A stretch of 64,000 bases of DNA from Iphione sp. A-MEVVRFRX5 (lineage: Eukaryota): NCBI GenBank assembly GCA_976226885.1, contig OZ320318.1:43028001-43092000 (forward strand). Direction: 5' to 3'. The position numbers and the translations under genes are program-made. The notes beneath the pieces were generated by a model. The model saw only the letters and a program-made list of their open reading frames with translations, made no database searches and had not been told where the DNA came from. Shown here one piece after another: positions 29,156-48,155 of this stretch. Numbering within the stretch: position 1 is the stretch's first letter; each line of letters opens with the position of its first letter.

Positions 29156-29721
29156 TTAACTTGCAATGCATCACAACTTAGAGCGTTCTCCCTCTTCACA
29201 GCAAACGAACTGCTAAGTGCGACACCTACTGTTGACCCAGAGTACCAGCCATGGGTACGTCCCTATAGGCATTTATGTACGCGGAGCCGGCACTACTGCT
29301 GACCAGGCAAAATGCATGTGATGTGCAATATATTTTTTCTCTCTCTTTCTCACCTTCCCCGTCACAGGTTTCATCCCCTTCTCCTCGTAAGCCCGAGGGC
29401 GCATGGCAACACTTAGCAGATGGTGATTTTTCCTGAACGTCCCGGATGGAATTTTCTACGTGCGCCCCCCCCCCTCCCCGCCCCCGTCGTTCGTCTAGTG
29501 TCCGGGCACCTTCTCTGACACTGTACACCATGTAAACGGTTGTCCAAGGAGAGGCCTAAATAGTGTCCATACCACACTGAAACTGCTGATAAGTGGGCTC
29601 TGGCTGAGTTTCTGTCAGAAACACCAGTTCTATAGCAGTTGGTTTAGGCAACTAGAGTATGGCGGCCAGAGAGTAGACGTCCACGACAGGGGCTCTCCAG
29701 ATTTCTTGATACCGACGCATA

Positions 29722-31302
29722 ATGCCGAAACTCACGTTGAAAGAGAGAGAGTCAAGAGGTGCATCTGGTACCCCGGTAACAAGATCGAGATCGAGATCGC
29801 AAAAAGGCGATAGCTCGAGCGATAGAGGATCGATCGAAAAAGGCAATGGCAAGACCATGGGCGATAATCTGAACATCGAAATACGGGGCGCCAACAAGGA
29901 GAAACCGGATGTAAACAGCACACAGCCGGATGTAAACAAAGAGAGCATCGCCGACATCGGGCAACATGATAAGGACAACACCGCGAACAGTAATGGCAAC
30001 AGCAACAATGGGCATGATCAACAGGCAAACCATACTCATAGCCCAGACAACGCGACCAACATGAGAAATGATAGTACAGGTGCTACAGACAACAACGATC
30101 CTGTACAAGAATCTGCCGTGACTATCATAGCCGAGCTCAGGAAGGAAATAGCAAACCTGCGGGAACAGCTGGCATCAGAGACCACGAAACTGAGAGGCGA
30201 AATAGCTGAACTACGTAAAGAAAATCAGAAGACTCGTGGAGGAGCAGGGGTTAAAGACGTGACTACCTGCACTGAGACTGCCAGAAAACTGGATTCGGTG
30301 AGAAGTGATATAGCCATTATCACTGCCAACACAGCTATTCTGTCCAAGAAATGCGAGAAGTTGGATAACGACATCTCTAGAATCGAATTGAAAGACAGAT
30401 CAAACAGGCTGGTTATTGAAGGAATCCCTAAGAGAGAAGAGGGCAACTTACGAAGGTTCGTGGAAGGTGTCCTTTTTCATGCGGCTGGCGTGCACCGCAA
30501 CCGACTGCACGAAGTCTACAGGCTGCCGGGAGGAGAGAATAACATCAGAGCGTGCGTAGTGCTCGACACTCTCGAGACGAAAAAGACCCTGATGAAGCAC
30601 AGAGCATCATTAGCAAGGTCCCGCTGGTATTCAACAATATATATCAAGGAGGACATTCCGCCCAGAGCGATGGATGCACACAAGATGCAAAACCGGATAG
30701 CATCGGCGGCGAAAAAATGTGGAAGACGCGCGACGGTCAGAGGCATAGACCTCCTAATAGAGGGGGAGAGATTCACACCCCTAGACGTCTATGATCTACC
30801 AAACGACGTGAAGGAGGTCCTAGCTGCAACCAGTTCCACAGATGACATATTCTGCTTCAACAACGACGTACAGGGCCTATCGCCGATGGAGTACTCACCC
30901 TTCGAACATAACGGCAAATTCTACACGTGCATAGAAACTGCGTACCAAACTGAAAAATCGCGCTGCTGCCAAGACTCTCGCGCAGAGCGAGATATAAACA
31001 ACGGAACCTCGGGCTATGACTCGCGCCGCGCCGGTTATCGGATCGAGGAATCTGAAACATGGAAAGACAATCTCGAGGTAACGCTAGATAGTATATTGGC
31101 TAGCAAATTCTCTGCCAATCAGTTGCACAGTGACATTCTTATTGCAACAGGTGAAAAGCGTCTAATTTATGTTGACAACGACAGAACGCTCGGTAGCGGT
31201 GATAGGGGTTGGGACTGCAAAGATGGCGGTACATGCGAAACCGGTAAAAATGTGCTGGGCCAAGCACTTGAGCGTTACAGGTCAAAGATAAGAACACAGT
31301 AA
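29722..31302 (+). CDS. LINE ORF1 protein, 526 aa: disordered N-terminus, coiled coil, L1/Tnp22-type RRM-CTD-like region, C-terminal NADAR (YbiA-like) domain
   Basis: Heptad-rich segments (IAELRKEIANLREQL...LRGEIAELRKENQK; LDNDISRIELKDR) are followed by SNRLVIEGIP, YRLPG..IRACVV, IYIKEDIP and ATVRGIDLLIEG, which are typical ORF1 RRM/CTD motifs. Residues ~374-526 carry NADAR-like motifs: LSPMEYSPFEHNGKFYTCIETAYQTEK, W447, SKFSAN, LIATGEKRLI, DRTLGSG, GKNVLGQALERYR. Confidence 0.85.
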   Translation: MPKLTLKERESRGASGTPVTRSRSRSQKGDSSSDRGSIEKGNGKTMGDNLNIEIRGANKEKPDVNSTQPDVNKESIADIGQHDKDNTANSNGNSNNGHDQQANHTHSPDNATNMRNDSTGATDNNDPVQESAVTIIAELRKEIANLREQLASETTKLRGEIAELRKENQKTRGGAGVKDVTTCTETARKLDSVRSDIAIITANTAILSKKCEKLDNDISRIELKDRSNRLVIEGIPKREEGNLRRFVEGVLFHAAGVHRNRLHEVYRLPGGENNIRACVVLDTLETKKTLMKHRASLARSRWYSTIYIKEDIPPRAMDAHKMQNRIASAAKKCGRRATVRGIDLLIEGERFTPLDVYDLPNDVKEVLAATSSTDDIFCFNNDVQGLSPMEYSPFEHNGKFYTCIETAYQTEKSRCCQDSRAERDINNGTSGYDSRRAGYRIEESETWKDNLEVTLDSILASKFSANQLHSDILIATGEKRLIYVDNDRTLGSGDRGWDCKDGGTCETGKNVLGQALERYRSKIRTQ

Positions 31303-31706
31303 CTTCTGTTATGCGTACTAATGTCATAAAAGATCTTGGCATTTAATGCTCAGCGAGCTTTAAGGCCGACATCCTTTTGACTATTTCGATTAAATCAATT
31401 GTACGTAATCTGGCTACACCAAGTTCTCACTGCAAAACTTGATCGTAAGTGAAAATAAGATCTCATCTATCAGTGTATGACTGTAAGTGATGTTGGAATA
31501 GTTTTGCTAACCAGATTGTACTGATTATTTTGTCCCGTGATTATCAAATATAAATTCGGGTAGAAGTGTAGCAACGGTCAAATAGATTCGGTTCTGTTCT
31601 TATTTGTTATCTAGAGTACGAAATACGAAATCATCCAAGCGTCCCTGACTGTCTGCGGACACGGATCGCCATTATCTGTGATGGCAGGACTTCAGAGAGT
31701 GTCAGA

Positions 31707-32324
31707 ATGCTACAGCAAGCTTATCTACCACCAATGTCAATCTTGGTTATACGTGTACGAAGGGCAACTTATTCCCAGCTACTGTGTCTCTTCAACCGAC
31801 GCGACTGGTCGGGGTTTGCGCTAATTCTAGTGCTGACTGGGACATATGACGTCCTAAGGAGAGAATGCTGCCAGTGGACACTGAGATGCCAAAATCCTGA
31901 CAGGTACATAACCCGTCTCCAGGGAACATTTTCGAGGATGTCAGAGGTGCTAGTCTCCGAGGGAACTCCTGGACCAAGACTCATGTGTGTGCCCATGCCG
32001 GGCGTACTGCTTCGCAGGTGCGAACCTGACCTTTATCTGGACGATCCGACGCAGCAGTTAATCCTGAACGAGTCTATCATTCTTCATAACGAACTGTGTC
32101 GGAGATCAGCAAACAGGTATGGACTCGACCCACCTGGTCTTGATGAGCGGATCAACCGCATAGTAGGAGGTGTAATTCAAATAGACGGTCATCATCTCAC
32201 TATAGACGGCATTCTTGTAGAACCTTATGTCGTCCAAGAATGGTTGCAGATACTTTCTCGCTTTATTAGGCGTTTTGTATGGAGGTTTGCTACACACATG
32301 TACCTGGTGTTTAACAATATATAG
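31707..32324 (+). CDS. Extra ORF of unknown function inside the LINE, between ORF1 and ORF2 (205 aa)
   Basis: This is the longest ORF in the window outside ORF1/ORF2. It is ATG-initiated, on the element's sense strand, and of normal protein-like composition. It contains IQIDGHHLTIDGILVEP, which resembles the ORF1 CTD motif ATVRGIDLLIEGERFTP. Confidence 0.5.
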   Translation: MLQQAYLPPMSILVIRVRRATYSQLLCLFNRRDWSGFALILVLTGTYDVLRRECCQWTLRCQNPDRYITRLQGTFSRMSEVLVSEGTPGPRLMCVPMPGVLLRRCEPDLYLDDPTQQLILNESIILHNELCRRSANRYGLDPPGLDERINRIVGGVIQIDGHHLTIDGILVEPYVVQEWLQILSRFIRRFVWRFATHMYLVFNNI

Positions 32325-32416
32325 ATTTTGGTTGCAGATACTTTCTCGCTTTATTAGACGTTTTGTATGGAGGTTTGCTATACACATGTACCTGGTGTTT
32401 AACAAAATATAGATTT
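32241..32416 (+). repeat. 88-bp tandem duplication inside the LINE spacer
   Basis: tggttgcagatactttctcgc...atatagattt starts at 32241 and again at 32329, with about 3 substitutions. Confidence 0.9.
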
Positions 32417-32813
32417 ACAATGAGTGCTAAATTCTAATGATCACAGACGTTACTGGTACACTTAGACAACTTTACACTAGCCGCTTGTGTTGGACTGCCA
32501 GAGATAACTTGTACAACTGCAGTGATGATGTTCAAATCAAGTCGCATTGACTGTTGAATCGGATCATGATTTACCTCCTGCATAGTTTACTGCGGCCTTC
32601 TGATCACACTCATGCTTGTTTTTTTTTTTTTTTTCTTGACTATGTGACTGTCTGCATGGTTTGTTTGGTTGCTTAATCTCAGATCGTATCTCGCGTTCTC
32701 TTAATCCATGTTATGTGTATGCGAAATCGCGTCTCTTATTGACAACTATCATTTGTGTCTGACGACTGAAATCTTCTTAGTATCGTTTATTGAGCTGTTT
32801 TGATTCGTATGTC

Positions 32814-33092
32814 ATGGATAACTCTAGGGCCACTCAGGAAATTTTACGGTTTGGCCTCCGATGTTTATTTATCCCAGTTGTTGTGTCCACTATTTATCTC
32901 AGCGACGCTAAAGAGTGCTATCAGTTAGACCAAAGAGACTATGTACTCCAGATTGTTCTTTCGTACTTCATTTTTGCCGTGATCCTGTACACATTGGCCT
33001 GGTATACAACGCCTATTAATATCTTCTGTATTCATTGTCTGGATGAAACTACTGACTTTACTGACTTAACCATTCACACTTTCTCCTACTAA
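32814..33092 (+). CDS. Possible small membrane protein ORF (92 aa from ATG, two hydrophobic segments) in the LINE inter-ORF spacer
   Basis: The first ATG of track ORF 32790-33092 is at 32814. Hydrophobic stretches are ILRFGLRCLFIPVVVSTIYL and YVLQIVLSYFIFAVILYTLAWY. The ORF is short and could be chance. Confidence 0.3.
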   Translation: MDNSRATQEILRFGLRCLFIPVVVSTIYLSDAKECYQLDQRDYVLQIVLSYFIFAVILYTLAWYTTPINIFCIHCLDETTDFTDLTIHTFSY

Positions 33093-33325
33093 TGCAGACC
33101 TGTTCCAACCATCCTGATCGTGGCAATCTGTCCATTATAAACAACACCCCGGGTCACCAGGTGTACCTGCCATTCCACCCAAGTCCGTGACTCGCTTAGT
33201 CACTTTAATTCAACATCCAATCAGACAATATTACTACCCACTAATACTCTCTTAACTCTTATCTGGAGAGCCCCAACGTCACCACTAGTGTCACCGTCTC
33301 TTCGAATATCACGATCAGTAACACA

Positions 33326-36127
33326 ATGGTGATAAAGATCGCAGGTTACAACATTAGGAGCCTGCCAAAGAAAACCTAGCAGTTGGCTGGCCTACTCTCA
33401 GCAGCCAACATCGACATACTATGCATCGGTGAATCCTGGTTGGGAGAACATCACAAGGATGATGAACTCTATATCCCTGGCTATAAGTTCATCAGAAAGG
33501 ATCGTCAAGGGGTGGCTGCAAAACGAGGGGGAGGACTGGCGATATATTACAAAGAGTATATTCAACTCCAGTGTATGATCCCCCTGCCGGAGAATACCTC
33601 AAACTGTGAAATGATGGCTGCAAAATTCAAAATGGGAATGCACAGGCCAGTTTGCATCCTCAACGTCTACCGTCCACCGAGCGAGCCAATGAAGAGCTCT
33701 ATAGCAGCGATAGAAGCAGCCGGCAGAGCTATTCTGAGATCAGGAAGATCCGACAAAGTCATATTAGGCGACTTCAATTTTGACATATTAAACGATAAAT
33801 CGGCGGGGACAGGGATAGTCAATGCCCTATCAGGGCTAGGCTTTGCACAGCTAATACAGGAATCTACCATGCTATATAATGACCACTGCTTAGACCATCT
33901 GTGGGTCTCAAAACCAGGAGATTTCACTGGTGGAACGTTAGAGTGGTTCTTGAGTGACCACTTGGCAACAGTGGCCACAATAAAGAAGGGCAAGCCTCGT
34001 CTAAAATGCTCCACGTACACCTCGAGGAGATGGTCGGACATCAACATTGAAGAGCTGCACAACCACATGCGAACCACGAGTATGAATCGAGGGACCGACC
34101 ATGAAGACTCGTGGAATCAGTTCGAAGGAAGCCTCCGCGACTGGCTGGACAAAGAGTGTCCCCCGAAGACAAGAACGCGATGGGAGGAGCCTGATGGCTT
34201 TGTCGCCCCAGCGCACGTGAAGGAAGTCCTGGCTGAACGAACATATTTCTACAGGAAATGGAAGGCGGATAAGACGGAGGATAATCTCCAGATCTTCAAG
34301 TTTTGGAATAGGAATGCCAGGAAAGCCTTAAAGGAAGCCAGGAAAAAAGATTGGGAGCGACGACTAAAAGACGCTCGTGGAGACGCGAGCCTACTCTGGG
34401 AGAGCCTAAATGAGGCCATGAACAGGAAGCGCCGAAAACAGACTCTTCCGGATAAAGACGAATGGCAAGAAAAACATGGGAAGAGCTTTGCTGAATCGTT
34501 AAACCATTATTTTGTTGAGGAGGTCGAGAAGCTAGCAGGACGCTCGGAAGAAGACAGAGCAAAGGAAACAGAGTTGATCAAGGATCATTTATTTGGAGCC
34601 GGCTTCGAAATTCCGATGCCTACTCCATTAGATGTCAGGCAGCTGATCAAGTCTATTGACGTCAAGAAGTCAAGTGGTATTGAAGGCATACCAAGTCGTG
34701 TATTAAAACCGCTTCTTGAACTCTGTCCGGACTATATGGCCTGGCTCTACGGCGAAATCCTTAACACCGGCCACTACCCAACTAGTTGGAAAATTGCGCG
34801 GGTGAGCCCTTTGTTCAAAAAGGGCTCACTGAACGAAGCTGGTAATTATCGACCAGTTTCCATACTGCCGGTCCAAGGCAAATTATGCGAGAAATGGTTC
34901 ACAACAAACCCAACCACACAACTCGAGCGCAAGGAGCAATTCTGCCCCTCTCAGCACGGATTCCGGGCATCAAGAGGAACGGAAACTGCAGTCATCAACT
35001 TGGTCAACAAGGCAACAGAACTGATCAACGCGAACCAGTACTGTTGCCTACTCACATTTGATATGCGAAAGGCGTTTGACCTTATTCCACACGTCTCCAT
35101 CATCAAGCGCCTTCAGGAACTGGGTGTAGGGCCAAAGTTCAGGAGACTGATTGCCTCATACCTACATGATCGACAGCAGTTCGTCAGATGTCAAGGCACC
35201 GATTCGACCATGCTAACCATCCGACAGGGAGTGCCACAGGGTTCAATATTTGGCCCTGTGGCATTCATCTTGGCTGTAAATAACATCACGGACATCCTCC
35301 CTACTGGGAGTCACGCTGTTATGTATGCCGATGACCTGTCGGTCATCGCCCATGCAAGGGATCTACTGCGTCTGAGAAATGTGGCAAATCTCGTATTGAC
35401 CAGGGTCTCAGACTGGTGCGCCAAAGAAAACTTGATCCTGAGTGGTAACAAGTGCGCATATCTTCCAATGGGGAAAGCCACGAACATACCGTTGGACCTA
35501 TCGTTGCAAGGTAATGACTTGCACCAAGATAAAGTGACAGCGCTACTTGGTTACCACCTTGATGGGAGGCTAAGCATGAAGGACAGCATGAAAATCGTAA
35601 AGAAGAAGACGTGGGGAATAGCACTATCCATAGGCAGAACAAAAGGCTTCCTTAGTTTGGGAGCGAGACTCGTGTTGCTCAAGGGCCTTCTCCTACCGCA
35701 TTTCCAATATGCAGCTGCCCTTTGGTACGGTATCTCCTCGTCGGACAAAATACGACTCCAAATCCATCTCAACAAATGCTGTAGGATATGCCTCCAACGT
35801 GAAATATTCCTCTCCGCTGCTAGACTAGAGTCGCAATTCGGGATCCCACGAGTAAGAGATCTTGTAGAGCGTAGAGGCCTCGTGGCGATCCACAACCAAC
35901 TAAAACTAGGACTGCTACAGCCAAGAAAGGACACTAAGACACGACGTGGTCAGGAAACAAGGGTGTATGTGGATAAACCCAACAGCACCAAGTTCGCAAA
36001 GTCTCTACGTTATCGAGGGGTTCGGAGGTGGAATAACCTGTCGCCTGACCTCAAACTGGCCAAGAAAATCACCGTGAGAGGCTTGGCGTCGGCCGGAATC
36101 GACGGGGCATGGGAGTACAATACTTGA
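33326..36127 (+). CDS. LINE ORF2: APE-type endonuclease + reverse transcriptase; single in-frame TAG at codon 18 (33377-33379)
   Basis: ATG at 33326 is in frame with track ORF 33383 and gives MVIKIAGYNIRSLPKKT*QLAGLL. EN motifs: YNIRSL, GESW, VYRPP, GDFN, LDH, SDH. RT motifs: YRPVSIL, QHGFR, FDMRKAFD, GVPQGSIFGP, YADD. The C-terminal RWNNLSPDLK is typical of CR1/L2-group ORF2. Confidence 0.92.
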
Positions 36128-37019
36128 GTCTAAAACTCATGAGCTCTTAACTCGTCCCCATCTGTAGGCCAGATTGACTCACACTCCCATCACTAACATC
36201 TAACATCTTCACTAGCTGCTTAAGCTAACAGGATAGGCAGGGCGGGCTTACTAGCCACATACTGTTATAGATACCCTCATGATCGTGTCAGGCAGGGGTG
36301 CTTATACTTTCTCTGCTGTATGTGTAACTAGACGAGGGACATTATGTGCACTCTGATATTGTCCAAATTATGTTATTATGGGTTAAGTTACCGGTAGGTA
36401 ATAGTACAATAACCGTCTGAGATCACCTGTTTCTGAAATGTACCGCGCCACTCAAAACATGACTGCCAGGCGTAGCACTACCATTTATGTGACCGAGACC
36501 TAAACTGGTCTGATCTTTACCCAAATTGCTCACTGTGATAAATGAATCCTCGTGATACTATGGCTGCCCACTTGAGACCATATGTTATGAAGCTATGCAC
36601 TCAGGTTCGCAATCGTAGCAAACAATTCAGCGTTATACACACCCATAGGACTGTATAACTATAAAGGCATGATAAAAAGAGCCTGTTGTATACGACACAT
36701 TCCCTTGCTTTACATCGTCAGTATGATTAGACTATATGGTTACCGTTTTAAAAGTGGTGTTAAATGTTAACTTAACTGCACTGAAGACAGGACTAGCAAC
36801 ACAGGCGATTGCATGAACAACTATTTATTTTTCTATGATGATCCATGACTGCTACATCATGCTCAGCACAAGTCCAAATACCACTGAACTTGATTGAATG
36901 TCAACGTTGCATTACTTAAATCTCATTATCTTGCCTTGTATATACGTTTTATCTACAAAACAATTGGTCGTTGGGCCAGTTCCTCTGGAAAACTCTGTAC
37001 AATGCGTCGGAGATTGCTG

Positions 37020-37051
37020 AATAAAAACTTGAAACTTGAAACTTGAAACTT
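37020..37051 (+). repeat. LINE 3' terminus: polyadenylation signal plus (AAACTTG)n tail
   Basis: AATAAA at 37020-37025; AAACTTG at 37025, 37032 and 37039, and AAACTT at 37046. Short tandem-repeat tails are characteristic of CR1/L2-group LINEs. Confidence 0.85.
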
Positions 37052-38862: not shown

Positions 38863-40108
38863 AAGGGTCCTAGGCGATAAAAAAAATCAGAGAAAGATAA
38901 AACGCAGAGGCAACGGTAAAGAAAGAGAACGAAAGGGAAGGGAAAAGAAAAGGGACATCCTATACCAGAGGGGATTGCAACAGAAACAAAGAATGATAGT
39001 AAGATTAAGAGAAAGGGAAAAGGACAAATCTATGTACAGTTAGGAGGAAAGGGAGAGAGATGGTGTTGATTTCCTCAGTTGTTGTCTTACACGAAGCACT
39101 CTCTTTCCGTACTATCTTTTGCTCGGTCTGTCTTGCTCCGTCCCTCTTCGACTCTCCCTCGATCGGTATCTTTTCTACGACATTTTCTTTCCTCTGTTCT
39201 CCTTCCCATTCTCTTCAGCTTCCTCCACCTCTCATATTTCTGAAAACTCTCTGAGGAAAACCTTCCTGCTCCATGTTGATTGCATCTGTTCGCTCGAGGC
39301 AACCGTTCGTGTTATGACAAGGCCGCTTTATTCCTCCAGCTGCCAGTCCGTTCCGCTTCCCCCGTCCGCCGGTTATATTTTTACCGGCAACTCTCCCACG
39401 GATATCAAGGCGAGCAATTGATTCACGTTTTACAAACAACCCTGGCTTCTGGCTCCTCCGCTAGCTGCAATGTGAGCAAGAGTGGTAGTGTTTTTAAGCA
39501 AGTCCATAAGGCGTTGCAACGAACACTGACAGAAAGTTTTTAATCTACGATATATTGATATCATACGGGCTTCGGGTCGGGAGTGGTCTGATATACTGTA
39601 TGAAATGAAATTTTGGACGTACCAACATCTGAGGGATACAAACAGCATATGGTATCAGATGAGGTTAGGGGTCCATATATACTAAGAAGAAAATGGATGT
39701 CAATCGGTATAAAAACGCATATTAATAAATTTTAATGAAGAGGGTCGTTTTCTACAGTCATCTAATATGGGGAATACACAATACACCAAATATATATATA
39801 TATATATTTTAATATGTGCATTCTGAAATCCTTATTTATGGTGAGGTACGATTTCTTATGTAGACATAGAAAAGCTCTTTTCGTATTTTTCTTCACTCGG
39901 ACGTATAAATAGAACATTTAAACGGATAAATCTGATTGAATTTTCGAACACTAAACTTTGACTGGATAAAAATGTAGCATTATCTAAAATGGAAATATGG
40001 ATAAATCACCTAAAGGGTAATTCTTGTATTATTATTATATACTCTAAAATATGAATATGAATATTATTTTTATAGTATTATTAGCTATGAAATATAATCT
40101 ATTACAAT

Positions 40109-40799
40109 ATGTGATAGATACAGCACGAGTACAGCACTGTACGCGATATATTACTGTAAAAACGTATTTTTACTGCTTAATTGCAGTAATATTCTATAAT
40201 CTATAATGTCCCGACACTCCCATCAATAAGCAATATATTGCTTGGCTGCCTCAAATAGGCTCAAAGAGTGTTAAAGACGGCGTTTTTACTGCGAGTGTAC
40301 ACAGCNNNNNNNNNNNNNNNNNNNNNNNNNNNNNNNNNNNNNNNNNNNNNNNNNNNNNNNNNNNNNNNNNNNNNNNNNNNNNNNNNNNNNNNNNNNNNNN
40401 NNNNNNNNNNNNNNNNNNNNNNNNNNNNNNNNNNNNNNNNNNNNNNNNNNNNNNNNNNNNNNNNNNNNNNNNNNNNNNNNNNNNNNNNNNNNNNNNNNNN
40501 NNNNNNNNNNNNNNNNNNNNNNNNNNNNNNNNNNNNNNNNNNNNNNNNNNNNNNNNNNATTATAGTCCTTGGAAGTTTTATCGCGAATACGCGGTAAAAT
40601 GACGTTATTTTTACCGCAAGTGTACACAACTTCATTTTATTGCTTAATCACGTTTTTCAGTGATGTGGAGAGAGAGAGAGACAAGTGTATTATTTTGAAC
40701 AAATGAGAGTACTACAGCAGTGGAAAGTTTGAGCATGATACACAGATTATACAGTAATATATCGTGTACAGTGCTGTACTCATGCTGTATCTATCACAT
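40109..40799. repeat. Palindromic non-autonomous repeat family, copy B, ~50-bp terminal inverted repeats, contains an assembly gap
   Basis: atgtgatagatacagcacgagtacagcactgtacgcgatatattactgta (40109) is inverted at ~40750-40799. The internal segments 40560-40630 and ~40722 match 22963-23032 and ~22789. Confidence 0.65.
40306..40558. other. Assembly gap (253 N)
   Basis: N run. Confidence 1.
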
Positions 40800-41199
40800 T
40801 TATACATGCCTTTACTCATGAGAATATTGAATACATTGTACTACATATTATGATCCACCAAGTATGGTCATACTCAACTGTACGTTTACGTCTGATATTC
40901 GCATATTATCTGTTGAAGTCTGTTGGAATACGATGTGGAGGTAACTCAGCCCCTAATATAGAACATGGGATTTATAAATGGCTAAACATTAAAAGACGAT
41001 AGCTAAAATTAATAAAAATCTATGCATGAAGAATATTTGTGTGAAGTGAATAATGGACGATGTGAAGCGAAAAGTAAACACTTGATGGGATTCATTATAC
41101 CTCTGAACAGCAATCCATCAGCTTATATTTCCTCTTTTGCCTTGTGGCCCTCTCTTCTGAGTACTTTTGTAATTTTTTTCTTTATATTATAGAGGAATT

Positions 41200-43130
41200 T
41201 ACTAGAGAGCGATGGGGACTCAAGTATTAAAACTGGTGAAAAGTAGGGCATATAGAACTAAAACAACGACAGACTTATGTTTCACAGATATGACAGTTGA
41301 GTAACAGAGTAAAATGATAGAAGAAACGATCAGTGATCATTGCCTGCTGTACTTATAAAAACAGATAAAGCTCCGAGATTCTGGAAGAAATTACTTTAGA
41401 ATGTATTATAATAGACTTAATACTGGAGATTTAGACGGCAAACTAATGGTGTACGATTGGACAGATTTGGAGTGCATATTGGATATGGGCGACAAATCGA
41501 AATATTTTTAGTAGACAATGATATTAGGATGTACATGTATACGTGAGCAATGCACGCTGCAGCAGCAGAGAATTCCGACTAAATGTTCGCCATTAGTAGA
41601 GTAACTAAAACGAAGAACAGGAAACAAAACAATAAAGAAAAAGGTACAAATAACAGGATAGACTGTGACAGATGTATCTGCAAGTAATGCATTCAATTAA
41701 GCAGTTGTCGCAGAATTCTTGAAAAGTTTAGTAGCTTGACATGTAAGGCAGAAAAGTACAGAGGCAACACTGGTAAGGCTCCCTTTTAGGCTAAGTGAAG
41801 TACTAGTATATGCATTACAAAGTATTCCGAATAATAAATTAAGTCTGCTAGAGGACACACCCTCAACAATGCTTAACATATTTTATCATTGTTTATTTAA
41901 TCATGGATTTGATAAACACTAGTACTGAGGAGTAAGGTCCCGAAGGAATAGCTTTCTCAGATTATGCCACTGCATAAACCAGGTTCAAGCAACGATGCCA
42001 CAAATTATTTGTTTATGTGTTCATGTCTGAATGCTCCATATATATAACTGAATTAATAATTCAGCTTTTCTCTCTATACATATATGCTCCACTATATTAT
42101 CAAAAATATTTGCTATATCCATAATAAAACAATTTCATGTTTTTTTAATTACAGAGAGAATTCAAAAAGCGAACAATCGCCGTTTCCGCCAAAATCATTT
42201 GGTTTTGGAAAAATTTCGATTTCAAATAGTGGCCTAAGGCAACAGTCATTTTCAATCAGTTAAAAGGGGCCCAAGGCCCTACCTCAACACTTTTCATACC
42301 TGCAAACATGTAAACAGCTTGTGTTTTTAGTAGACCATTAATATAATCATAACCTGAGTAGATAAGGTCACAGTACTGAGCCTCATGATACCTCTTTACT
42401 GGTATATTATGAGGCATTATAGGCACATTGGTCAGTTGTCTTTGACTGACAAAGTATTAAAACGATTAATTGATTACAGGTTACAGAAATGTTTGGAAGA
42501 AAATAGTAAAACTACAGTGCCACAATATGGTTTTAGACCTAGCATTGGAACAGCTTGAGCTGTATTCATACAGCACTAAAAGATAAAAATAAGTTCGTTG
42601 TACGATTCATTGTCGATCTAAGGCATTTGCCGCAGAATCCCATGAGGTAATATCAAATAAGTTCTTCTAAATATGTGCTGAACCAATAATACTGTGGATC
42701 ACTGACAATTTAACTAACCTATAACATTAAACAAATGTAGGCCTGAAAAGTAAGACCTGGAGGCAAAAACATGTGGAGTCTTCAAGTATCAACTCTGGGT
42801 CCATTGTTGTTCATTTTATCAAAGATGAGCAACATGTGTTTGATAAATGTAAATGTTTATTTTATGCTGATTTATTGGCCTTAGTACTTGTGTTAAAACC
42901 ATATATATTATGTGTAAAGAATTTGCAGGATATCATAATAAATGTAGAAGGCTGCTCAGAGAAAATAGAATTTTGATCAACGAGTAAACGACTAAACTTA
43001 TGCTAGTTAGACATATAGCACAATGCAAGGAGATACAAATTACACTAAACAGAACTACAAAACGGCAGTTGAACAACATCAACTACTTGAGGACACTATT
43101 TAGTGGTAAACTAACCTGCAATCTATGAAT
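41200..43130 (+). pseudogene. Old, decayed CR1-group LINE ORF2 (EN end + RT) with stops and frameshifts
   Basis: Manual translation gives TTDLCFTD and TISDH (SDH at 41332-41340); YRHIGQLSLTDKVLKRLIDYRLQKCLEEN (42418-42504); QYGFRP (42523-42540); DL[fs]KAF (~42615); CGV[fs]QVSTLGPLLFI (~42773); YADL (42863). Motif order matches APE-RT. Boundaries are approximate. Confidence 0.8.
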
Positions 43131-44739
43131 AAATGACTAACTTTGTAAAGGATACCCGAAATCTAAATTGTTAATGTGATTCCATATTACATTTTGATAA
43201 TGTTTGCCTGACTTATTGCTAGAACAATGATTTTACCCATTATTAGTAATTGTAGAAATACTGTATTGCCAGAAAAGGGTGGCTATTTGCTAATTTTTCA
43301 TGTCGAATCTGTTGCAAAAACTAGTTTTAATGAATTCCTTTTCCTTATTAGGTAATTTTGAGTCATGTGGTTAGATATTTAAATGATCCAATTTACATAA
43401 ATACATACACTAGCTTACTGAGGTGACAAAATTTAAGGATTATTTTAAATGCTTATATAGTGCAGAAATAAACAAATGTCCTTTCAGGTACTGAAACCCT
43501 TTCCAAAAATATCCTTTCTCTGTGTAATAATCAGTTTTTAAGATGAATTTACACATTTCACAGTATCTAAGAATGTCAAGGAATGCATTTAGCATTAAAT
43601 TATATCTTTTTAAAAGGTTAGTTGCCTTAAATTTGAACGAAGATATCCCAGGATCTAGAAAAAATATTTACTCAATTTTTGCACAAAATGATGTCCTAAA
43701 GTGGTCTTTAGTTTCCATAGGTTTACACTGGAATGGCCTTTTTCTTTGGCTGGTTAGAATTGTAGAAAATATGTATTGGCAGAAAAAAGAGTGGTTCAAT
43801 GGAAAAATTGATTAGTTTAAGAAGAGCAGGCTACAGAACAGCTTTACTTTTCTCACATCTTCCGCCTAGATATACTACAAGACAACATAATCGTGAATCT
43901 ACTATATCAAGACTAGGACAGTTGGAGGAAAATGATCAGGTGAGGATAGGTATTCAGCGTCATAGGAATAGCAGATGGCGATTCAAACTAGATCTGTTTG
44001 TCAAAAATGGATGAATGAAAAAACATACATTTAAAAACGTTTTCTACTAACATTACTAGTGAGACTTGGCTCTCCCAGTGATGGATTCTTGAAACTAGGA
44101 CCTAATTGGAATGAAACGGAAGATATTTAATAGATTAATTACTTTCTGTCTTGTATGGTTTTTCATGGTAGCAAAACTGGAAATTAGCAAAATGGGTAGG
44201 TAATGAAACATAAGTGAGCAAATTGAAATGTAACAGAGTGTCTAGAAAGTCCCTCCACAACTCGAATGTGACGCACTTCCCTGCCCTCAAGGTGTGAGAC
44301 CAATTTATGAGAACTGGTAAGACGGTTGGGCAAGGGACGTCCTACTTCTCCCCTACCCTGTAGCATGGTACGCCAGAGGGGCATGGGGGACATTCCCCTA
44401 AGATGAGTTCAACAAAAATGCCTTGACCGTTGTGTTGTCTCTGTGGTGCAATGGATAACATCATCAGTTCAAACATGGAAAGATCATTAATGGGTTCCAA
44501 CCCTGACCATGAAAAAACTCCCACACTTATTATCAGAGCATTAGACCGAGGTGTGGGGAGGTTTTTGTAAATGGTCTAAAAACGTTTTCTATTCTGGTTC
44601 GGAAAATATTATGCAAACTGTCATTTTAAATGTTTTAAGATTTTTTTTCACAATGTTTTTAAATTGTTTCTGTGCTGGCTGGGTAACCTCCAAATTTAGA
44701 TACACTGACGCCAGTCTATCATGCTTAAGAAGAACCGAC

Positions 44740-45000
44740 ACAATATGGAACTAATTCGGAGTTTGTCTTGCACCTGAATGCATAAAAGGTTGTAATTGCT
44801 TGGGAATATTAAGCAAATACGTAAATAGGGTGCCAATACAAATGGCCATATACAGGAGGTATAGAAGCATTTGTTGAACAAGGCTGTAGACTGAGTTAAG
44901 CAAATATTTTCATACCCACCAAGTCTGCCATTCATATTGATACACTCTGCACAGAAATTTTTTATTGTACTCCTAAAAAATTGATGGAAAGGCCTTTGAA
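44740..45000 (-). pseudogene. Decayed LINE ORF2 C-terminal fragment
   Basis: Minus-frame NGRLGGYENI...LAPYL...KLRISS resembles the C-terminal RL..YK...PYL...KLRISSH pattern of invertebrate LINE ORF2 proteins. Confidence 0.35.
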
Positions 45001-47601
45001 ACTTCGAGTTTGCTCGACCAAAGGGAGGTGACAATGTTTACCTTCATTCGTGTTTGGTGCTACATACCTATAGTAATTGTCAATACTTAAACATTAAGAC
45101 CCAAACATGCACTAGCTTTACATGTGATTTTAGGAACACAGCATGGCGGCTGTCTTGCAGATTTAGAGTTTCAACAATGAATTCTGTAGGAAATAGATCA
45201 TTTTCGAAGAATTAATAAAGAATTTATTATGAAAACACCTTTTAGGTATCTTTTTACGCCATTCCAATGCATATTTTCTATTAAATAAAAGGCTTCTGTG
45301 TAGAGCATCAATCTCATCCAAACCCGAAGTCAATTATCTTTTCATTTAATGTGTATGCTTACTGAGTCGAAAATAATGTTCACAAAAAATCCCCTGAGAA
45401 GTGCAATATACATTGCACCGCTTTGTTCAGTTAATACTCACGTTCTGTATCACCACTATAATATAATAATATTAGCTATAACACTAGTAAAATTGAGTCG
45501 GCCAGTAATTGATTATACATGTGAATCTCCAAGAGAACGAAAAGTATTACCACTGTGCTAACCGTGGCTGCTATCTCAACTTCTCGGTTCTAAGCACTAT
45601 ACGAAGCTGGGCCCACAATACACCCTTAGATTTAGATATCCTGCGGTCAGAATAGACGAGATGCTTTCATATATTTGCATCCCTGTATGGATAGGAATCT
45701 TTCTACAGCTTCAGAGAGAAGGAGGTTGGACCGTTACAGTATTTCAAAAGCAATAGGCAGAAATGATAGTGTCTGATAAGGCTGAAAAATCAAAGATAGG
45801 TCTTCATAGAATAAAAAGCACGAACTGAGAACTAGGTTCACCCTTTTCAACTGCGATGGCTAGGCAGTACTTAACTTATGTTACCTCAAACTATTACCGT
45901 GACCTCTAATAGGGAACAAAAAGTCATCTTTTAGGAGCCTTCTACATGTTTTTGATATACAGCAGTAATAATGCTATAGCACTTCTTTTTTTTATCAACA
46001 TCATTATATTATTCCTAAATCCCGAAAATATATATATGCCACCACGTCAAGGTCTTCTTATTATTGCCTTTTTTTACTTATTGTTGAATATTGTATCCGA
46101 TCGGGGCTGGGTTGTTTTTCGTGTAACTCGGTCTTGAATAATGAGTAGGTACGGTTTCGTCTGCACTGAGTCTGCGTACCTGCAGACTATCAAAAAGCAA
46201 GGGCCGTAAGTAATCTACGGGTCATTTCAGAGGTCGCTAAACATGCGTCTGGAAGCAGACACAGCTCTAGTCTCGGAGAGAATGGGAGCTCGACGCGAGA
46301 CTTCAGTCCGGGATCATTGGCATCAGCTGCCGGTCGAAAGCACTTTCCTTAAAACAAAATTAATGAATAGGAATGTTGATATCATTTTAATAAATACAGA
46401 TTTGAAGGGAAATCTAAACCGTAGTGCCTGGATAGATAGATGGTCATGGTAGGTCTATAAGCAGAAAGCAGATATAGCTTGCAGCAGGAGCAAAGATAAG
46501 AGTAGAGAGATGTACAAAGAAACACAAGAGGCAGAATTTTATAAATAGTGATATAGTCATTCTGGCCTATAATCCCCCCTTTTTCTATATTAAACCTTCT
46601 ATCCATATAGAATTTCTTTTATTATTATCAATACCTTTCCATACAGCTTTCATTCTTTCTTTTAAAAAAAATCTGTTAACAAAAATTAAACGTTTTTTAA
46701 TTGACCAAAAGACAGAGTTTAAAATTATAGTGAAACAGACGGTAAGATAAGATAGGAAAAAATTATATATTTTCAATCTAAGACGAACTGACGGGGATAG
46801 GAGTGGGCCACTCTGCAAACTCTTCAATAGAACGAACTCGACCTTCAGAAAACGTCTACAGATTCGGAAGCCGCAAAATCCAAATCATTGGTGTATTAAA
46901 TTTAAGTATGTGTATAAGATTGCATAAACTTGTGTTCTTGATTTTGTGGAATGGTGAGTGTGAGAGTGTGTTATTGTACAAATGTACAAATATGCGTTTA
47001 TGAAGGGTTATGTGTATGTGGGGCGTGGGTGTTTGTCTATGTAGGAGAGAGTATTTTACCATGTGTGGGATTGTGTGTTTCATTGTGAGTGGGTGATCAC
47101 CTAGCCATGTTAAGAACTCAATTATTCTATGAAAATAATCTTGACTCAATGGAGACAAATGCCAACACTCAATTTGCTGAATCTTATGCATCATTCGTCT
47201 CTGTTGGGTCACTGCAGGTTGGACATAAGTTTGAGAAGATATAGCTTCAGAACATCTCTCTACTTAGTACATCACAAGCCTAGAATGTCCCCATCCAGAA
47301 AATCATTCTTGCATATGGGTGTAAAGAATGGGAGCAGTCTGACTCCTCAAGCAATGGAATAAAAATTAATATTGGGTTTTAAGAAACATGCATTTAAAAA
47401 GGGAAGAATTCGGCCAACAACTATTCACTGAATATATGTTTTCTACAGTCTCCTTGCATTACGTTTGTCCAAACTTGCTTTTGCTAGTATGTAATGTACT
47501 TGAATTAAACGTTACTCTTCAATTGTAGTGATTGGAATAACTTAATCTGTAATGAGAAGTAAATTAACAATCATTGTACTTTTTATTCAATGGCGTGTAC
47601 A

Positions 47602-48155
47602 CGCGTGCGTACAAGAATACTATTAATCATGGCTAAGTATAATGTATTTCTGTATATACAGGCATACAACACTAAGTAATTGATTTTGTATGTATTATGT
47701 ACCTTTGTATGTAAATAGTTTTGTATTGCGTTATACGCATATATATATATGCTGATGTTTGTTCAAGAGTATCTGGGAAGACATGATTGAAAGTAAAGGC
47801 AAATGAAGTTAAACAAATCCATGTATCTCTGTATATATTGAAATATATCTTTAACGCCGCTTTTTATGCCTTAGTCTCGCGTGCGTACAAGAATACTATT
47901 AATCATGGCTAAGTATATGTATTTCTGTATATACAGGCATACAACACTAAGTAATTGATTTTGTATGTATTATGTACCTTTGTATGTAAATAGTTTTGTA
48001 TGGCGTTATACGCATATATATATATGCCGATGTTTGTTCAAGAGTATCTGGGAAGACATGATTGAAAGTAAAGGCAAATGAAGTTAAACAAATCCATGTA
48101 TCTCTGTATATATTCAAATATATCTTTAACGCCGCTTTTTATGCCTTAGTCTCGC
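47602..48155. repeat. ~276-bp near-identical tandem duplication
   Basis: cgcgtgcgtacaagaatac... starts at 47602 and 47878; both copies end ttttatgccttagtctcgc. Confidence 0.9.

What the first reader, a model, noticed from the sequence alone, without database searches (positions are those of the whole stretch)
30841..31302. A LINE retrotransposon whose ORF1 carries a C-terminal NADAR (YbiA-like ADP-ribose/N-glycosidase) domain
SEEN: after the coiled coil and RRM/CTD-like region, ORF1 continues in frame for ~150 aa (residues 374-526). Motifs occur in NADAR order and spacing: LSPMEYSPF-EHNGKFY-TCIE(405)TAYQTEK(412) vs family LSNF..PF..DG..Y.T.EHYYQA.K; W447; SKFSAN vs AKF.QN; LIATGEKRLI vs LL.TG...LV; D(487)RTLGSG vs D..WG.G; GKNVLGQALERYR vs G.N.LG..LM..R. 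KNOWN: NADAR proteins include E. coli YbiA and plant PyrR-associated N-glycosidases acting on riboflavin intermediates, and the antitoxins of DarT1-NADAR systems that remove ADP-ribose from guanine in DNA. The family also occurs in phages and other viruses. Accessory ORF1 domains I know for CR1/L2-group LINEs are PHD, RRM, CCHC, Tnp22-like and SGNH esterase; I do not recall NADAR among them, but cannot exclude prior annotation. INFERENCE: ORF1p coats the element RNA, so the element may carry its own ADP-ribosylation eraser into the RNP. This could counter host PARP/ART marking of the RNA, cDNA or nicked target DNA, analogous to viral macrodomains. Several canonical positions differ (LSN>LSP, EHY>ETA, LVE>LIY, WG>LG), so it could instead be a binding-only or specificity-shifted domain.
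Basis: partly seen in the sequence, partly recalled or inferred. Interest (0 to 1): 0.92.

Follow-up and report, generated by a model that had tools for sequence, protein, structure and literature searches.

The report
LINE ORF1 protein with remodelled NADAR
A jumping gene (LINE retrotransposon) in this invertebrate-type genome really does carry a NADAR enzyme domain on the end of its first protein. The domain is kept by selection, but in this lineage it has swapped two residues that known NADARs need to strip ADP-ribose from DNA or RNA.

Summary
ORF1 residues 373-526 (window 30838-31299) are a genuine NADAR domain: Pfam gives 59 bits against a cut-off of 35. The AlphaFold2 model (pLDDT 90.5) aligns to a solved NADAR-ADP-ribose complex at Z 19.5.

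The domain sits in a complete 7.4 kb three-ORF LINE (29659-37051). The parts are ORF1 (coiled coil, conserved middle domain, NADAR), a separate SGNH-fold ORF, an endonuclease/reverse-transcriptase ORF2 and a (CTTGAAA)n tail.

The fusion is not a one-off. The first look at this genome flagged over 4,400 candidate NADAR matches. All 150 scored passed Pfam's cut-off, mostly in 450-650 aa ORF1-like frames. Public assemblies hold hundreds of ORF1-NADAR clusters next to APE-RT genes.

The NADAR domain has dN/dS of about 0.1. This element's clade is derived. The family's catalytic Glu is an invariant Tyr (Y483), the pyrophosphate-contacting Trp is Leu (L490), and LSN has become LSP. E405, K412, W447 and D487 are kept.

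I read it as a selected, remodelled NADAR that is binding-only or specificity-shifted, not a canonical eraser.

Novelty is reduced. A 2025 paper briefly noted NADAR in oyster LINE ORF1s, and this scan already holds about 100 notes on it in this genome. No function has been tested.

The parts
29659..37051 (+). Full-length non-LTR retrotransposon (7,393 bp)
   Evidence: Collinear with 8 other genomic copies at 74-99% nt identity. Six copies from different subfamilies start at the same base (ATGGCGGCCAGAGAG...), all end in the same tail, and all have unrelated flanks. No clear target-site duplication was seen.
29659..29721 (+). Short 5' UTR (63 nt)
   Evidence: Shared 5' terminus of full-length copies. 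The near-identical copy on contig C19 (locus L031) is truncated 2 nt before the ATG.
29722..31302 (+). ORF1 (526 aa), open in this copy
   Evidence: Intact 463-529 aa homologues occur in at least 15 diverged copies.
29722..30111 (+). ORF1 residues 1-130: N/S/D/G-rich, fast-evolving N-terminal region
   Evidence: Composition; dN/dS 0.3-0.85; poorly alignable between lineages.
30112..30396 (+). ORF1 residues 131-225: predicted coiled coil
   Evidence: Only weak coiled-coil Pfam hits (ZapB, DivIC, bZIP) in 10 of 16 copies, plus coiled-coil PDB hits. dN/dS 0.05-0.27.
30397..30837 (+).
   Evidence: dN/dS 0.05-0.15, with many invariant columns. No Pfam or PDB sequence match. Language-model leads only: Baculo_FP_2nd at 0.89-0.90 and L1 Transposase_22 at 0.84-0.85.
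30838..31299 (+). ORF1 residues 373-526: NADAR domain (the finding)
   Evidence: Pfam 59-63 bits; AF2 pLDDT 90.5; Z 19.5 to 8BAU and 15.4 to 2B3W; dN/dS 0.07-0.17, one pair 0.29.
30934..30957 (+). E405 to K412: retained NADAR ribose- and phosphate-contacting pair (E43/K50 of P. nicotianae NADAR)
   Evidence: Invariant in 20 clade copies. Spacing of 7 as in E88/K95 of E. coli C7 NADAR (PMC11543638).
31168..31191 (+). Y483-V-D-N-D487-R-T-L490: remodelled last strand and loop (canonical E....D..W)
   Evidence: HMMER alignments to 8BAU and 2B3W place Y483 at E125, D487 at D130 and L490 at W133. Y and L are invariant in the clade. Canonical lineages in the same genome read LIEA..D..WG.
31572..32324 (+). 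Middle ORF (ORFx, about 250 aa open frame): SGNH/GDSL-fold protein, active site degenerate
   Evidence: Conserved at 42-97% aa downstream of ORF1 in all clade copies. AF2 pLDDT 78. VIA-align (pdb_via_wide) Z 13-14; all 33 Foldseek hits at E<=1e-3 are SGNH hydrolases, SGNH-type acyltransferases or designed scaffolds; Oskar's OSK domain matches at E 1.3e-3 and Z 12.9. Block I reads CDSRT in most lineages but CDGRT here; block III reads GT(Y/F)D; block V reads DG(E/H)H. A stop lies at 31569-31571 and the first ATG (31707) is downstream of block I.
32241..32416 (+). Two tandem 88-bp copies spanning the end of ORFx
33326..36127 (+). ORF2: AP-endonuclease plus reverse transcriptase; in-frame TAG at codon 18 (33377-33379) in this copy
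   Evidence: Pfam RVT_1 105 bits and Exo_endo_phos 29 bits. The C19 copy (L031) and the C2 copy (L035) have open 933/931-aa frames from the same ATG. No CCHC knuckle.
37028..37051 (+). 3' tail (CTTGAAA)n
   Evidence: Two and a half to four units in nine copies, followed by unrelated flanks.

Best explanation
Window 29659-37051 is a young, nearly intact three-ORF LINE. Its first protein has a variable N-terminus, a coiled coil, a conserved middle domain and a C-terminal NADAR-fold domain. That much is shown.

The NADAR domain is an integral, selected part of ORF1p in a very large and old group of LINEs. In most of them it keeps the full catalytic set of YbiA-type NADARs. There it most likely removes ADP-ribose from bases (G or C) of the element's own RNA, cDNA or target DNA; this step is inferred.

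The lineage in this window is derived. After a long burst of change it fixed Tyr in place of the catalytic Glu, Leu in place of the pyrophosphate-contacting Trp, and a new invariant motif (C.DSRA.RD.NN..SG). It kept the ribose- and phosphate-contacting residues E405, K412, R435, W447 and D487.

I therefore think this element's NADAR no longer performs canonical Glu-dependent de-ADP-ribosylation. It more likely works as a ligand- or nucleic-acid-binding module of the RNP, a pseudo-enzyme that may still recognise ADP-ribose or a related nucleotide. A hydrolase with changed specificity is the close second. The neighbouring SGNH-fold ORF shows the same pattern: the fold is kept, the oxyanion Asn is lost in the clade, and the nucleophile Ser is lost in this sub-lineage.
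For: NADAR identity.

One element.

Fusion general in this genome: 150 of 150 scored hits from 3,025 candidates lie mostly in 450-650 aa frames. The Pfam model gives 4,416 first-look candidates, with 150 of 150 scored at 93 bits or more.

Fusion general elsewhere: the A1 profile finds 3,278 cluster representatives at E<=1e-3 and 835 at E<=1e-10. The best 150 mostly cover coiled coil, middle domain and NADAR. Three ENA contigs show NADAR-ORF1 followed by APE-RT within 1-2.5 kb.

Selection: NADAR dN/dS is 0.07-0.17 (one pair 0.29), like the middle domain and well below the N-terminus.

Derived active site: Y483 and L490 are invariant in 20 copies that are 42-97% identical to the window's domain. 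By contrast 142 of 157 public domains have Glu and 115 have Trp. The clade is monophyletic at 100/100 on a stem of 1.93 changes per site, sister to a Glu-type element that also has the SGNH ORF.

Role of the lost residues: E125 binds the distal ribose and W133 binds the pyrophosphate. Mutating the equivalent acid (D171 of E. coli C7 NADAR) abolishes activity (PMC11543638).

New clade-specific invariant motif at residues 416-438.

Parallel decay of the SGNH catalytic residues.
Against: No biochemical data exist for any LINE NADAR. The position of the lost Glu is naturally variable among active NADARs (Asp in the BC4488 NADAR family, which includes the DarT1-linked NADARs; His in phage NADARs; PMC11125620). 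Tyr, or the nearby D485, might therefore support a different chemistry. Residue equivalence rests on sequence-profile alignments plus a fold match; I could not inspect the model's pocket in 3D. No RNA run was listed, so expression is unknown. dN/dS between dispersed copies mixes selection on active lineages with neutral decay after insertion.
Confidence: 0.5

Rival explanations
1. Specificity-shifted enzyme. The Tyr/Leu site and the new DSRA.RD.NN motif form an active glycohydrolase for a different linkage or substrate, such as another ADP-ribosylated base, a ribose-linked mark or an NAD-derived cap.
For: The replaced residues are themselves invariant across lineages whose synonymous sites are saturated. 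A long stem followed by strong constraint is the classic pattern of a new function. The third catalytic position differs between active NADAR families: Glu, Asp or His (PMC11125620). E405, K412 and D487 are kept.
Against: No NADAR with Tyr at this position has been characterised. Loss of the pyrophosphate-contacting Trp argues for weaker ADP-ribose binding. The companion SGNH ORF is also losing catalytic residues.
Confidence: 0.33
2. Canonical eraser. This element's NADAR still removes ADP-ribose from guanine or cytosine in RNA or DNA and counters host ADP-ribosyltransferases.
For: The fold, E405 and K412 are conserved. NADARs are the only known hydrolases for G-ADPr on DNA and RNA, and an animal (sponge) NADAR is active (PMC11833690, PMC12945103).
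Against: The equivalent of E125/D171 is Tyr and the equivalent of W133 is Leu. D171A and D171N abolish activity in E. coli C7 NADAR. The Pfam score is 59 bits against 93-109 for Glu-type LINE copies in the same genome. No scabin/pierisin-type ART was detected in this genome, although that search had no positive control.
Confidence: 0.1
3. Passenger or structural filler. The domain was captured once and persists without a role of its own, or only stabilises ORF1p.
For: Retrotransposons within one clade can carry ORF1 proteins of different architectural classes (PMC3905857). This family has few copies: 3 at 99% or more and about 10 at 87% or more.
Against: dN/dS is about 0.1 over the domain. Thirty-one invariant columns include pocket residues. 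The domain is retained in hundreds of diverged lineages here and in other assemblies.
Confidence: 0.05

Closest known systems
YbiA-family NADAR hydrolases (E. coli YbiA 2B3W; Phytophthora nicotianae NADAR 8BAU)
   Same: Same fold over the whole domain (Z 15-19.5). Same E...K pair with spacing 7, the same Trp after helix 3 (W447 = W89), and the same KF..N, D..xG.G and G.N.LG motifs.
   Different: The last-strand catalytic Glu is Tyr, the WG Trp is Leu and LSN is LSP. The domain is fused to the C-terminus of a LINE ORF1 protein rather than standing alone. Sequence identity is only 20-25%.
Glu-type NADAR-ORF1 LINEs (same genome, public assemblies; oyster 'Tx1' LINE ORF1s noted in PMC12477816)
   Same: Same ORF1 architecture of coiled coil, middle domain and NADAR, upstream of APE-RT. 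The middle domains are homologous (E 9e-14 to the sister lineage). Some also have the SGNH ORF.
   Different: Those keep LSN, EQ/EH, LIEA and D..WG and score 93-109 bits on Pfam. This clade is a long-branch derivative with a remodelled site.
Esterase-type LINE ORF1 proteins (ZfL2-1; CR1, RTEX and Penelope esterases; PMC3905857)
   Same: An accessory hydrolase-fold domain travels with a coiled-coil ORF1 protein in a LINE. The SGNH fold is present in this element too.
   Different: Here the SGNH unit is a separate ORF, not the C-terminus of ORF1p, and NADAR takes that place. ZfL2-1 keeps its Ser-Asp-His triad and Asn; this ORFx lacks the Asn and, in this sub-lineage, the Ser.
Phage orphan NADARs and DarT1-NADAR antitoxins; viral macrodomains
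   Same: A mobile element carries its own ADP-ribose-processing domain. This is an analogy of logic and applies best to the Glu-type LINE lineages.
   Different: No cognate ADP-ribosyltransferase has been identified, no activity has been shown, and this clade lacks the catalytic acid.
Drosophila Oskar OSK domain (5A4A)
   Same: An SGNH fold without esterase residues, reused as an RNA-binding module. It appears among the structural matches of ORFx at Z 12.9.
   Different: No sequence relationship was shown; it is only a precedent for a non-catalytic SGNH domain.

Membership tests
NADAR superfamily (Pfam PF08719) | Profile match above the curated gathering score | tested here: met
   59.1 bits against 35.1 for the full ORF1 and 62.9 bits for the domain alone. 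All 16 clade copies match, best E 7e-18.
NADAR superfamily (Pfam PF08719) | [quoted passage not shown] | tested here: met
   AF2 pLDDT 90.5. Z 19.5 with rmsd 2.6 over 159 residues to 8BAU, and Z 15.4 to 2B3W; the next unrelated hit is Z 2.4.
NADAR superfamily (Pfam PF08719) | Conserved Glu and Lys of the E..Q..K motif (E43/K50 of P. nicotianae; E88/K95 of E. coli C7) | tested here: met
   E405 and K412 are invariant in 20 copies.
YbiA family of NADARs | Catalytic Glu in the last beta strand (Asp in the BC4488 family, His in phage NADARs) | tested here: not met
   Y483 aligns with E125 of 8BAU and is invariant in the clade. Of 157 public ORF1-NADAR domains, 142 have Glu.
YbiA family of NADARs | D..WG motif (D130 and W133 contact the pyrophosphate) | tested here: not met
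   D487 is kept but W133 is L490, invariant.
YbiA family of NADARs | ADP-ribosyl-base or N-glycoside hydrolase activity | not testable with these tools
   Needs a recombinant protein assay.
Riboflavin-intermediate N-glycosidase (TIGR02464 equivalog) | Score above the equivalog cut-off | tested here: not met
   53.7-57.5 bits against a cut-off of 73.7.
Non-LTR retrotransposon (LINE) ORF1 | First ORF of a multi-copy element with APE-RT ORF2, a common 5' end, 5' truncations and a 3' repeat tail | tested here: met
L1-type ORF1p (coiled coil, RRM, CTD; Pfam Transposase_22) | RRM/CTD RNA-binding domains recognisable by profile or fold | tested here: inconclusive
   No Pfam or PDB sequence hit in the middle region. 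Atlas leads are below 0.9 for Transposase_22.
CR1/L2 group (reader) versus Tx1 (label used in PMC12477816 for oyster elements) | Placement by RT phylogeny against reference clades | not tested
   No reference RT set was available. The best ORF2 homologues are unnamed at about 25% identity. Indirect signs favour a CR1-like type: a short tandem-repeat tail instead of poly(A), no CCHC knuckle in ORF2 or ORF1, and a C-terminal VRRWNNL motif that I recall as resembling the CR1 VRHWNRLP motif (from memory, a lead only).
SGNH/GDSL hydrolase (for the middle ORF) | SGNH fold | tested here: met
   Z 13-14 to many GDSL esterases. All 33 Foldseek hits at E<=1e-3 are SGNH hydrolases, SGNH-type acyltransferases or designed scaffolds.
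SGNH/GDSL hydrolase (for the middle ORF) | Catalytic Ser (block I), Gly (II), Asn (III), Asp-x-x-His (V) | tested here: not met
   The window sub-lineage has CDGRT (Ser to Gly). The whole clade has GT(Y/F)D (Asn to Tyr/Phe). DG(E/H)H is kept. No Pfam SGNH hit.

The most novel reading that the evidence does not exclude
Invertebrate LINEs are engaged in an ADP-ribosylation conflict with their hosts. Glu-type ORF1-NADARs would erase base ADP-ribosylation from the element's RNA, cDNA or target DNA, an animal counterpart of phage anti-DarT NADARs. The Tyr/Leu clade in this window would be a neofunctionalised offshoot whose NADAR, together with a pseudo-SGNH partner protein, reads a nucleotide-type mark rather than erasing it. 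It might, for example, steer the RNP to ADP-ribose-marked nicks or RNAs.
Probability: 0.2. Interest if true: 0.85.

Novelty: new variant of a known kind. Interest (0 to 1): 0.55.

Why it matters
NADARs are the only enzymes known to reverse ADP-ribosylation of guanine and cytosine in DNA and RNA, and their role in animals is an open question (PMC11125620, PMC12945103). The first look at this one genome flagged thousands of candidate NADAR matches. All 150 that were scored passed Pfam's cut-off, most in ORF1-sized open frames. The sampled copies sit at the C-terminus of coiled-coil ORF1-like proteins, and APE-RT genes follow them in the elements examined. Part of the reported 'metazoan NADAR' distribution may therefore really be retrotransposon-borne.

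If the Glu-type domains are active, base ADP-ribosylation would become a candidate layer of transposon control in animals. The derived clade described here offers a natural comparison: the same scaffold, with the catalytic acid replaced but constraint retained. It could separate binding from catalysis.

The three-ORF layout (ORF1-NADAR, a free-standing SGNH-fold protein, APE-RT) also extends the known range of LINE accessory modules.

Tried and rejected
1. The search for homologous proteins with the full ORF1 and with residues 340-526 returned nothing. This reflects the word index, because the exhaustive profile search found thousands.

2. phmmer of the single domain against PDB sequences was only marginal (E 0.21). 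The profile (E 0.0016 to YbiA) and the fold search settled the question.

3. The weak 'Headcase' Pfam hit of ORFx (20.7-22.4 bits, below the cut-off of 27) is rejected in favour of the SGNH fold.

4. The idea in note s1-352020, that ORFx is a diverged duplicate of the ORF1 C-terminal module, is rejected for the same reason.

5. The FAM76, ZapB and similar hits in ORF1 residues 81-225 are treated as coiled-coil or low-complexity noise.

Whether APE-RT follows ORF1 in the Glu-type lineages of this genome was therefore checked only on three public contigs.

7. No RNA sequencing run was listed for the element.

8. A search of this genome for scabin/pierisin-type ARTs (PF22596) found nothing, but the control rang nowhere, so it is uninformative.

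9. The ORF2 homologue search gave only unnamed hits at about 25% identity and was useless for clade assignment.

10. No target-site duplication could be defined at the element ends.

Full report
**Observation**

ORF1 occupies window 29722-31302 and encodes 526 aa. Pfam NADAR (PF08719) matches residues 387-524 at 59.1 bits against a gathering score of 35.1 (E 8e-16). The riboflavin N-glycosidase equivalog TIGR02464 also matches, but below its cut-off (53.7 against 73.7).

An AlphaFold2 model of residues 368-526, built on 20 genomic copies, is confident (pLDDT 90.5, pTM 0.87). Its matches to solved structures are:
- Phytophthora nicotianae NADAR with ADP-ribose (8BAU): Z 19.5, rmsd 2.6 over 159 residues.
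- E. coli YbiA (2B3W): Z 15.4.
- Geobacter lovleyi NADAR (8BAT): Z 7.7.
- The next unrelated chain: Z 2.4.

**The element**

Eight other genomic copies are collinear with window 29659-37051 at 74-99% nt identity, so ORF1 and the APE-RT ORF belong to one 7.4 kb element. Six copies from different subfamilies begin at the same base, which leaves a 63-nt 5' UTR. All copies end in 2.5-4 units of CTTGAAA followed by unrelated flanks.

Between ORF1 and ORF2 lies a third conserved ORF (31572-32324). It is found downstream of ORF1 in every copy of the clade at 42-97% aa identity. Its model (pLDDT 78) has an SGNH/GDSL fold:
- VIA-align (pdb_via_wide) gives Z 13-14.
- All 33 Foldseek hits at E<=1e-3 are SGNH hydrolases, SGNH-type acyltransferases or designed scaffolds.
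- Oskar's non-catalytic OSK domain matches at E 1.3e-3 and Z 12.9.

The catalytic blocks of this ORF are degenerate. Block I reads CDSRT in most lineages but CDGRT here. Block III reads GT(Y/F)D instead of GxND. Block V, DG(E/H)H, is kept.

ORF2 (33326-36127) has Exo_endo_phos and RVT_1 domains and no CCHC knuckle. In this copy it carries an in-frame TAG at codon 18; the 99%-identical copy on contig C19 (locus L031) is open. In this subfamily ORFx also has a stop ten codons into the frame used by related subfamilies.

The family has few copies: three at 99% or more, two at 95-96% and five at 87-90%.

**How general the fusion is**

Three searches bear on this:
- The domain as a protein query. 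The first look at this genome gave 3,025 candidates. All 150 scored were significant, at 38-100% identity, and most lay in open frames of 450-650 aa.
- The Pfam model. It gave 4,416 first-look candidates. All 150 scored reached 93 bits or more, again mostly in ORF1-sized frames. Ten of these were scanned; nine show an N-terminal coiled-coil-type region with a C-terminal NADAR, and the tenth (L039) is a short NADAR-only frame.
- A profile of the clade's ORF1. Searched against 1.84 billion cluster representatives, it found 3,278 hits at E<=1e-3 and 835 at E<=1e-10. The best 150 are mostly 400-500 aa and match from the coiled coil to the end of NADAR.

Three representatives lie on large ENA contigs, and in each an APE-RT gene follows within 1-2.5 kb. 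Language-model neighbours are NADAR clusters recorded from annelids.

**Selection**

Between subfamilies of the clade, Nei-Gojobori dN/dS varies by region:
- NADAR domain: 0.07-0.17, with one pair at 0.29.
- Middle domain: 0.05-0.15.
- N-terminal region: 0.3-0.85.

**Active site**

The ADP-ribose contacts and mutational data come from PMC11543638. In P. nicotianae NADAR the contacts are:
- E43 and E125 hold the distal ribose.
- K50, R79, W89, R93, W133 and D130 hold the pyrophosphate.
- K75 and R79 shield the pyrophosphate.

Mutating the acid equivalent to E125 (D171 in E. coli C7 NADAR) or K95 abolishes activity. PMC11125620 defines the YbiA family by the last-strand Glu, which is Asp in the BC4488 family and His in phage NADARs.

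HMMER alignments of the window protein and of the clade profile to 8BAU and 2B3W give these equivalences:

| Window residue | P. nicotianae residue | State |
|---|---|---|
| E405 | E43 | kept |
| K412 | K50 | kept |
| R435 | K75 | conservative change |
| G438 | G78 | kept |
| W447 | W89 | kept |
| D487 | D130 | kept |
| Y483 | E125 | changed |
| L490 | W133 | changed |

Y483, L490 and the LSP variant of LSN are invariant in 20 copies whose domains are 42-97% identical to the window's. Glu-type lineages of the same genome read LSN...EQ/EH...K...LIEA..D..WG. Among 157 NADAR domains from the 150 best public ORF1-NADAR proteins, 142 have Glu, 144 have the first Glu, 124 have Lys (18 have Arg) and 115 have Trp.

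A maximum-likelihood tree puts the Tyr clade as one group (100/100) on a stem of 1.93 changes per site. It is sister (95/75) to a Glu-type element. That sister element also has an ORFx homologue (E 1.7e-16).

The clade also has a new near-invariant motif, C.DSRA.RD(I/L)NN..SG, at residues 416-438. Glu-type lineages are variable there.

**Interpretation**

Three things are shown: the domain is a real NADAR, it is an integral part of a LINE ORF1 protein, and it is under purifying selection.

For the family at large, a nucleic-acid base de-ADP-ribosylase riding on the RNP is the most economical inference. NADARs are the only hydrolases known to reverse G-ADPr on DNA and RNA, they also reverse C-ADPr, and a sponge NADAR is active (PMC11833690, PMC12945103).

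For this element the catalytic acid and one pyrophosphate contact have been replaced, and the replacements are themselves fixed. I weight the readings as follows:
- A non-hydrolytic binding module (pseudo-enzyme): about 0.5.
- A hydrolase with shifted specificity: 0.33.
- Retained canonical activity: 0.1.
- No role: 0.05.

The parallel loss of catalytic residues in the conserved SGNH-fold ORF tips me toward the binding reading. None of this has been tested biochemically.

**Comparison and novelty**

PMC12477816 (Genome Biology 2025) reports NADAR domains in Ectocarpus Gypsy Pol proteins. It mentions in passing that ORF1 proteins of several oyster 'Tx1' LINEs in Repbase appear to contain YbiA-family NADAR domains. 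Full-text searches found no other paper linking NADAR to LINE ORF1, and the NADAR biochemistry papers do not mention transposons.

This scan already holds about 100 notes on NADAR-ORF1 in this genome, on other DNA. They include the three-ORF layout and the loss of catalytic residues in some copies. I re-derived those points independently here.

What this window adds:
- A clean full-length example.
- The demonstration that its clade is a monophyletic, long-branch, constrained derivative of Glu-type ancestors.
- The fold assignment of the middle ORF.

Esterase domains in LINE ORF1 proteins are known from CR1, RTEX and Penelope (PMC3905857). The differences here are that the SGNH unit is a separate ORF and that NADAR holds the ORF1 C-terminus.

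Clade assignment (CR1/L2-like versus Tx1) was not tested. The tandem-repeat tail and the absence of CCHC point toward a CR1-like type.

**Limits**

- The RRM/CTD nature of residues 226-372 is unverified.
- Expression is unknown.
- The host species is not identified.

Noticed in passing
window 31572-32324: A conserved third ORF between ORF1 and ORF2 has an SGNH/GDSL fold but degenerate catalytic blocks: CDGRT here against CDSRT in most lineages, and GT(Y/F)D instead of GxND. Across lineages it has no conserved ATG. In this subfamily a stop (31569-31571) sits ten codons into the frame used by related subfamilies.
   Followed up: yes
window 32241-32416: Two tandem 88-bp copies (about 97% alike) span the stop codon of the middle ORF. 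They are present in the three youngest copies only.
   Followed up: partly
window 33377-33379: In-frame TAG at codon 18 of ORF2 in this copy. The 99%-identical copy on contig C19 (L031) has an open 933-aa frame but is 5'-truncated 2 nt before the ORF1 ATG.
   Followed up: yes
L039 (G000:C22:27636416-27636865, minus strand): The best Pfam NADAR match in the genome (176 bits) lies in a short 212-329 aa frame without the ORF1 coiled coil. It is fully canonical (EASPRDRIWGIG). It may be a host stand-alone NADAR gene or exon. In the tree it groups with public multi-NADAR proteins.
   Followed up: partly
public proteins P0081 (1075 aa) and P0203 (870 aa): These proteins have four to five tandem NADAR domains. 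They recall the three-NADAR SNA-3 protein of C. elegans mentioned in PMC11125620, and they are not ORF1-like.
   Followed up: no
L058:2772-3407 and L060:690-1487: Glu-type NADAR-ORF1 elements of the same genome also carry a homologue of the SGNH-fold ORF downstream (E 1.7e-16 for L058, 1.5e-3 for L060). The three-ORF plan therefore predates the Tyr/Leu remodelling.
   Followed up: partly
window 40001-48000: G+C drops to 0.30-0.37 against about 0.40-0.49 elsewhere in the window. Not examined.
   Followed up: no
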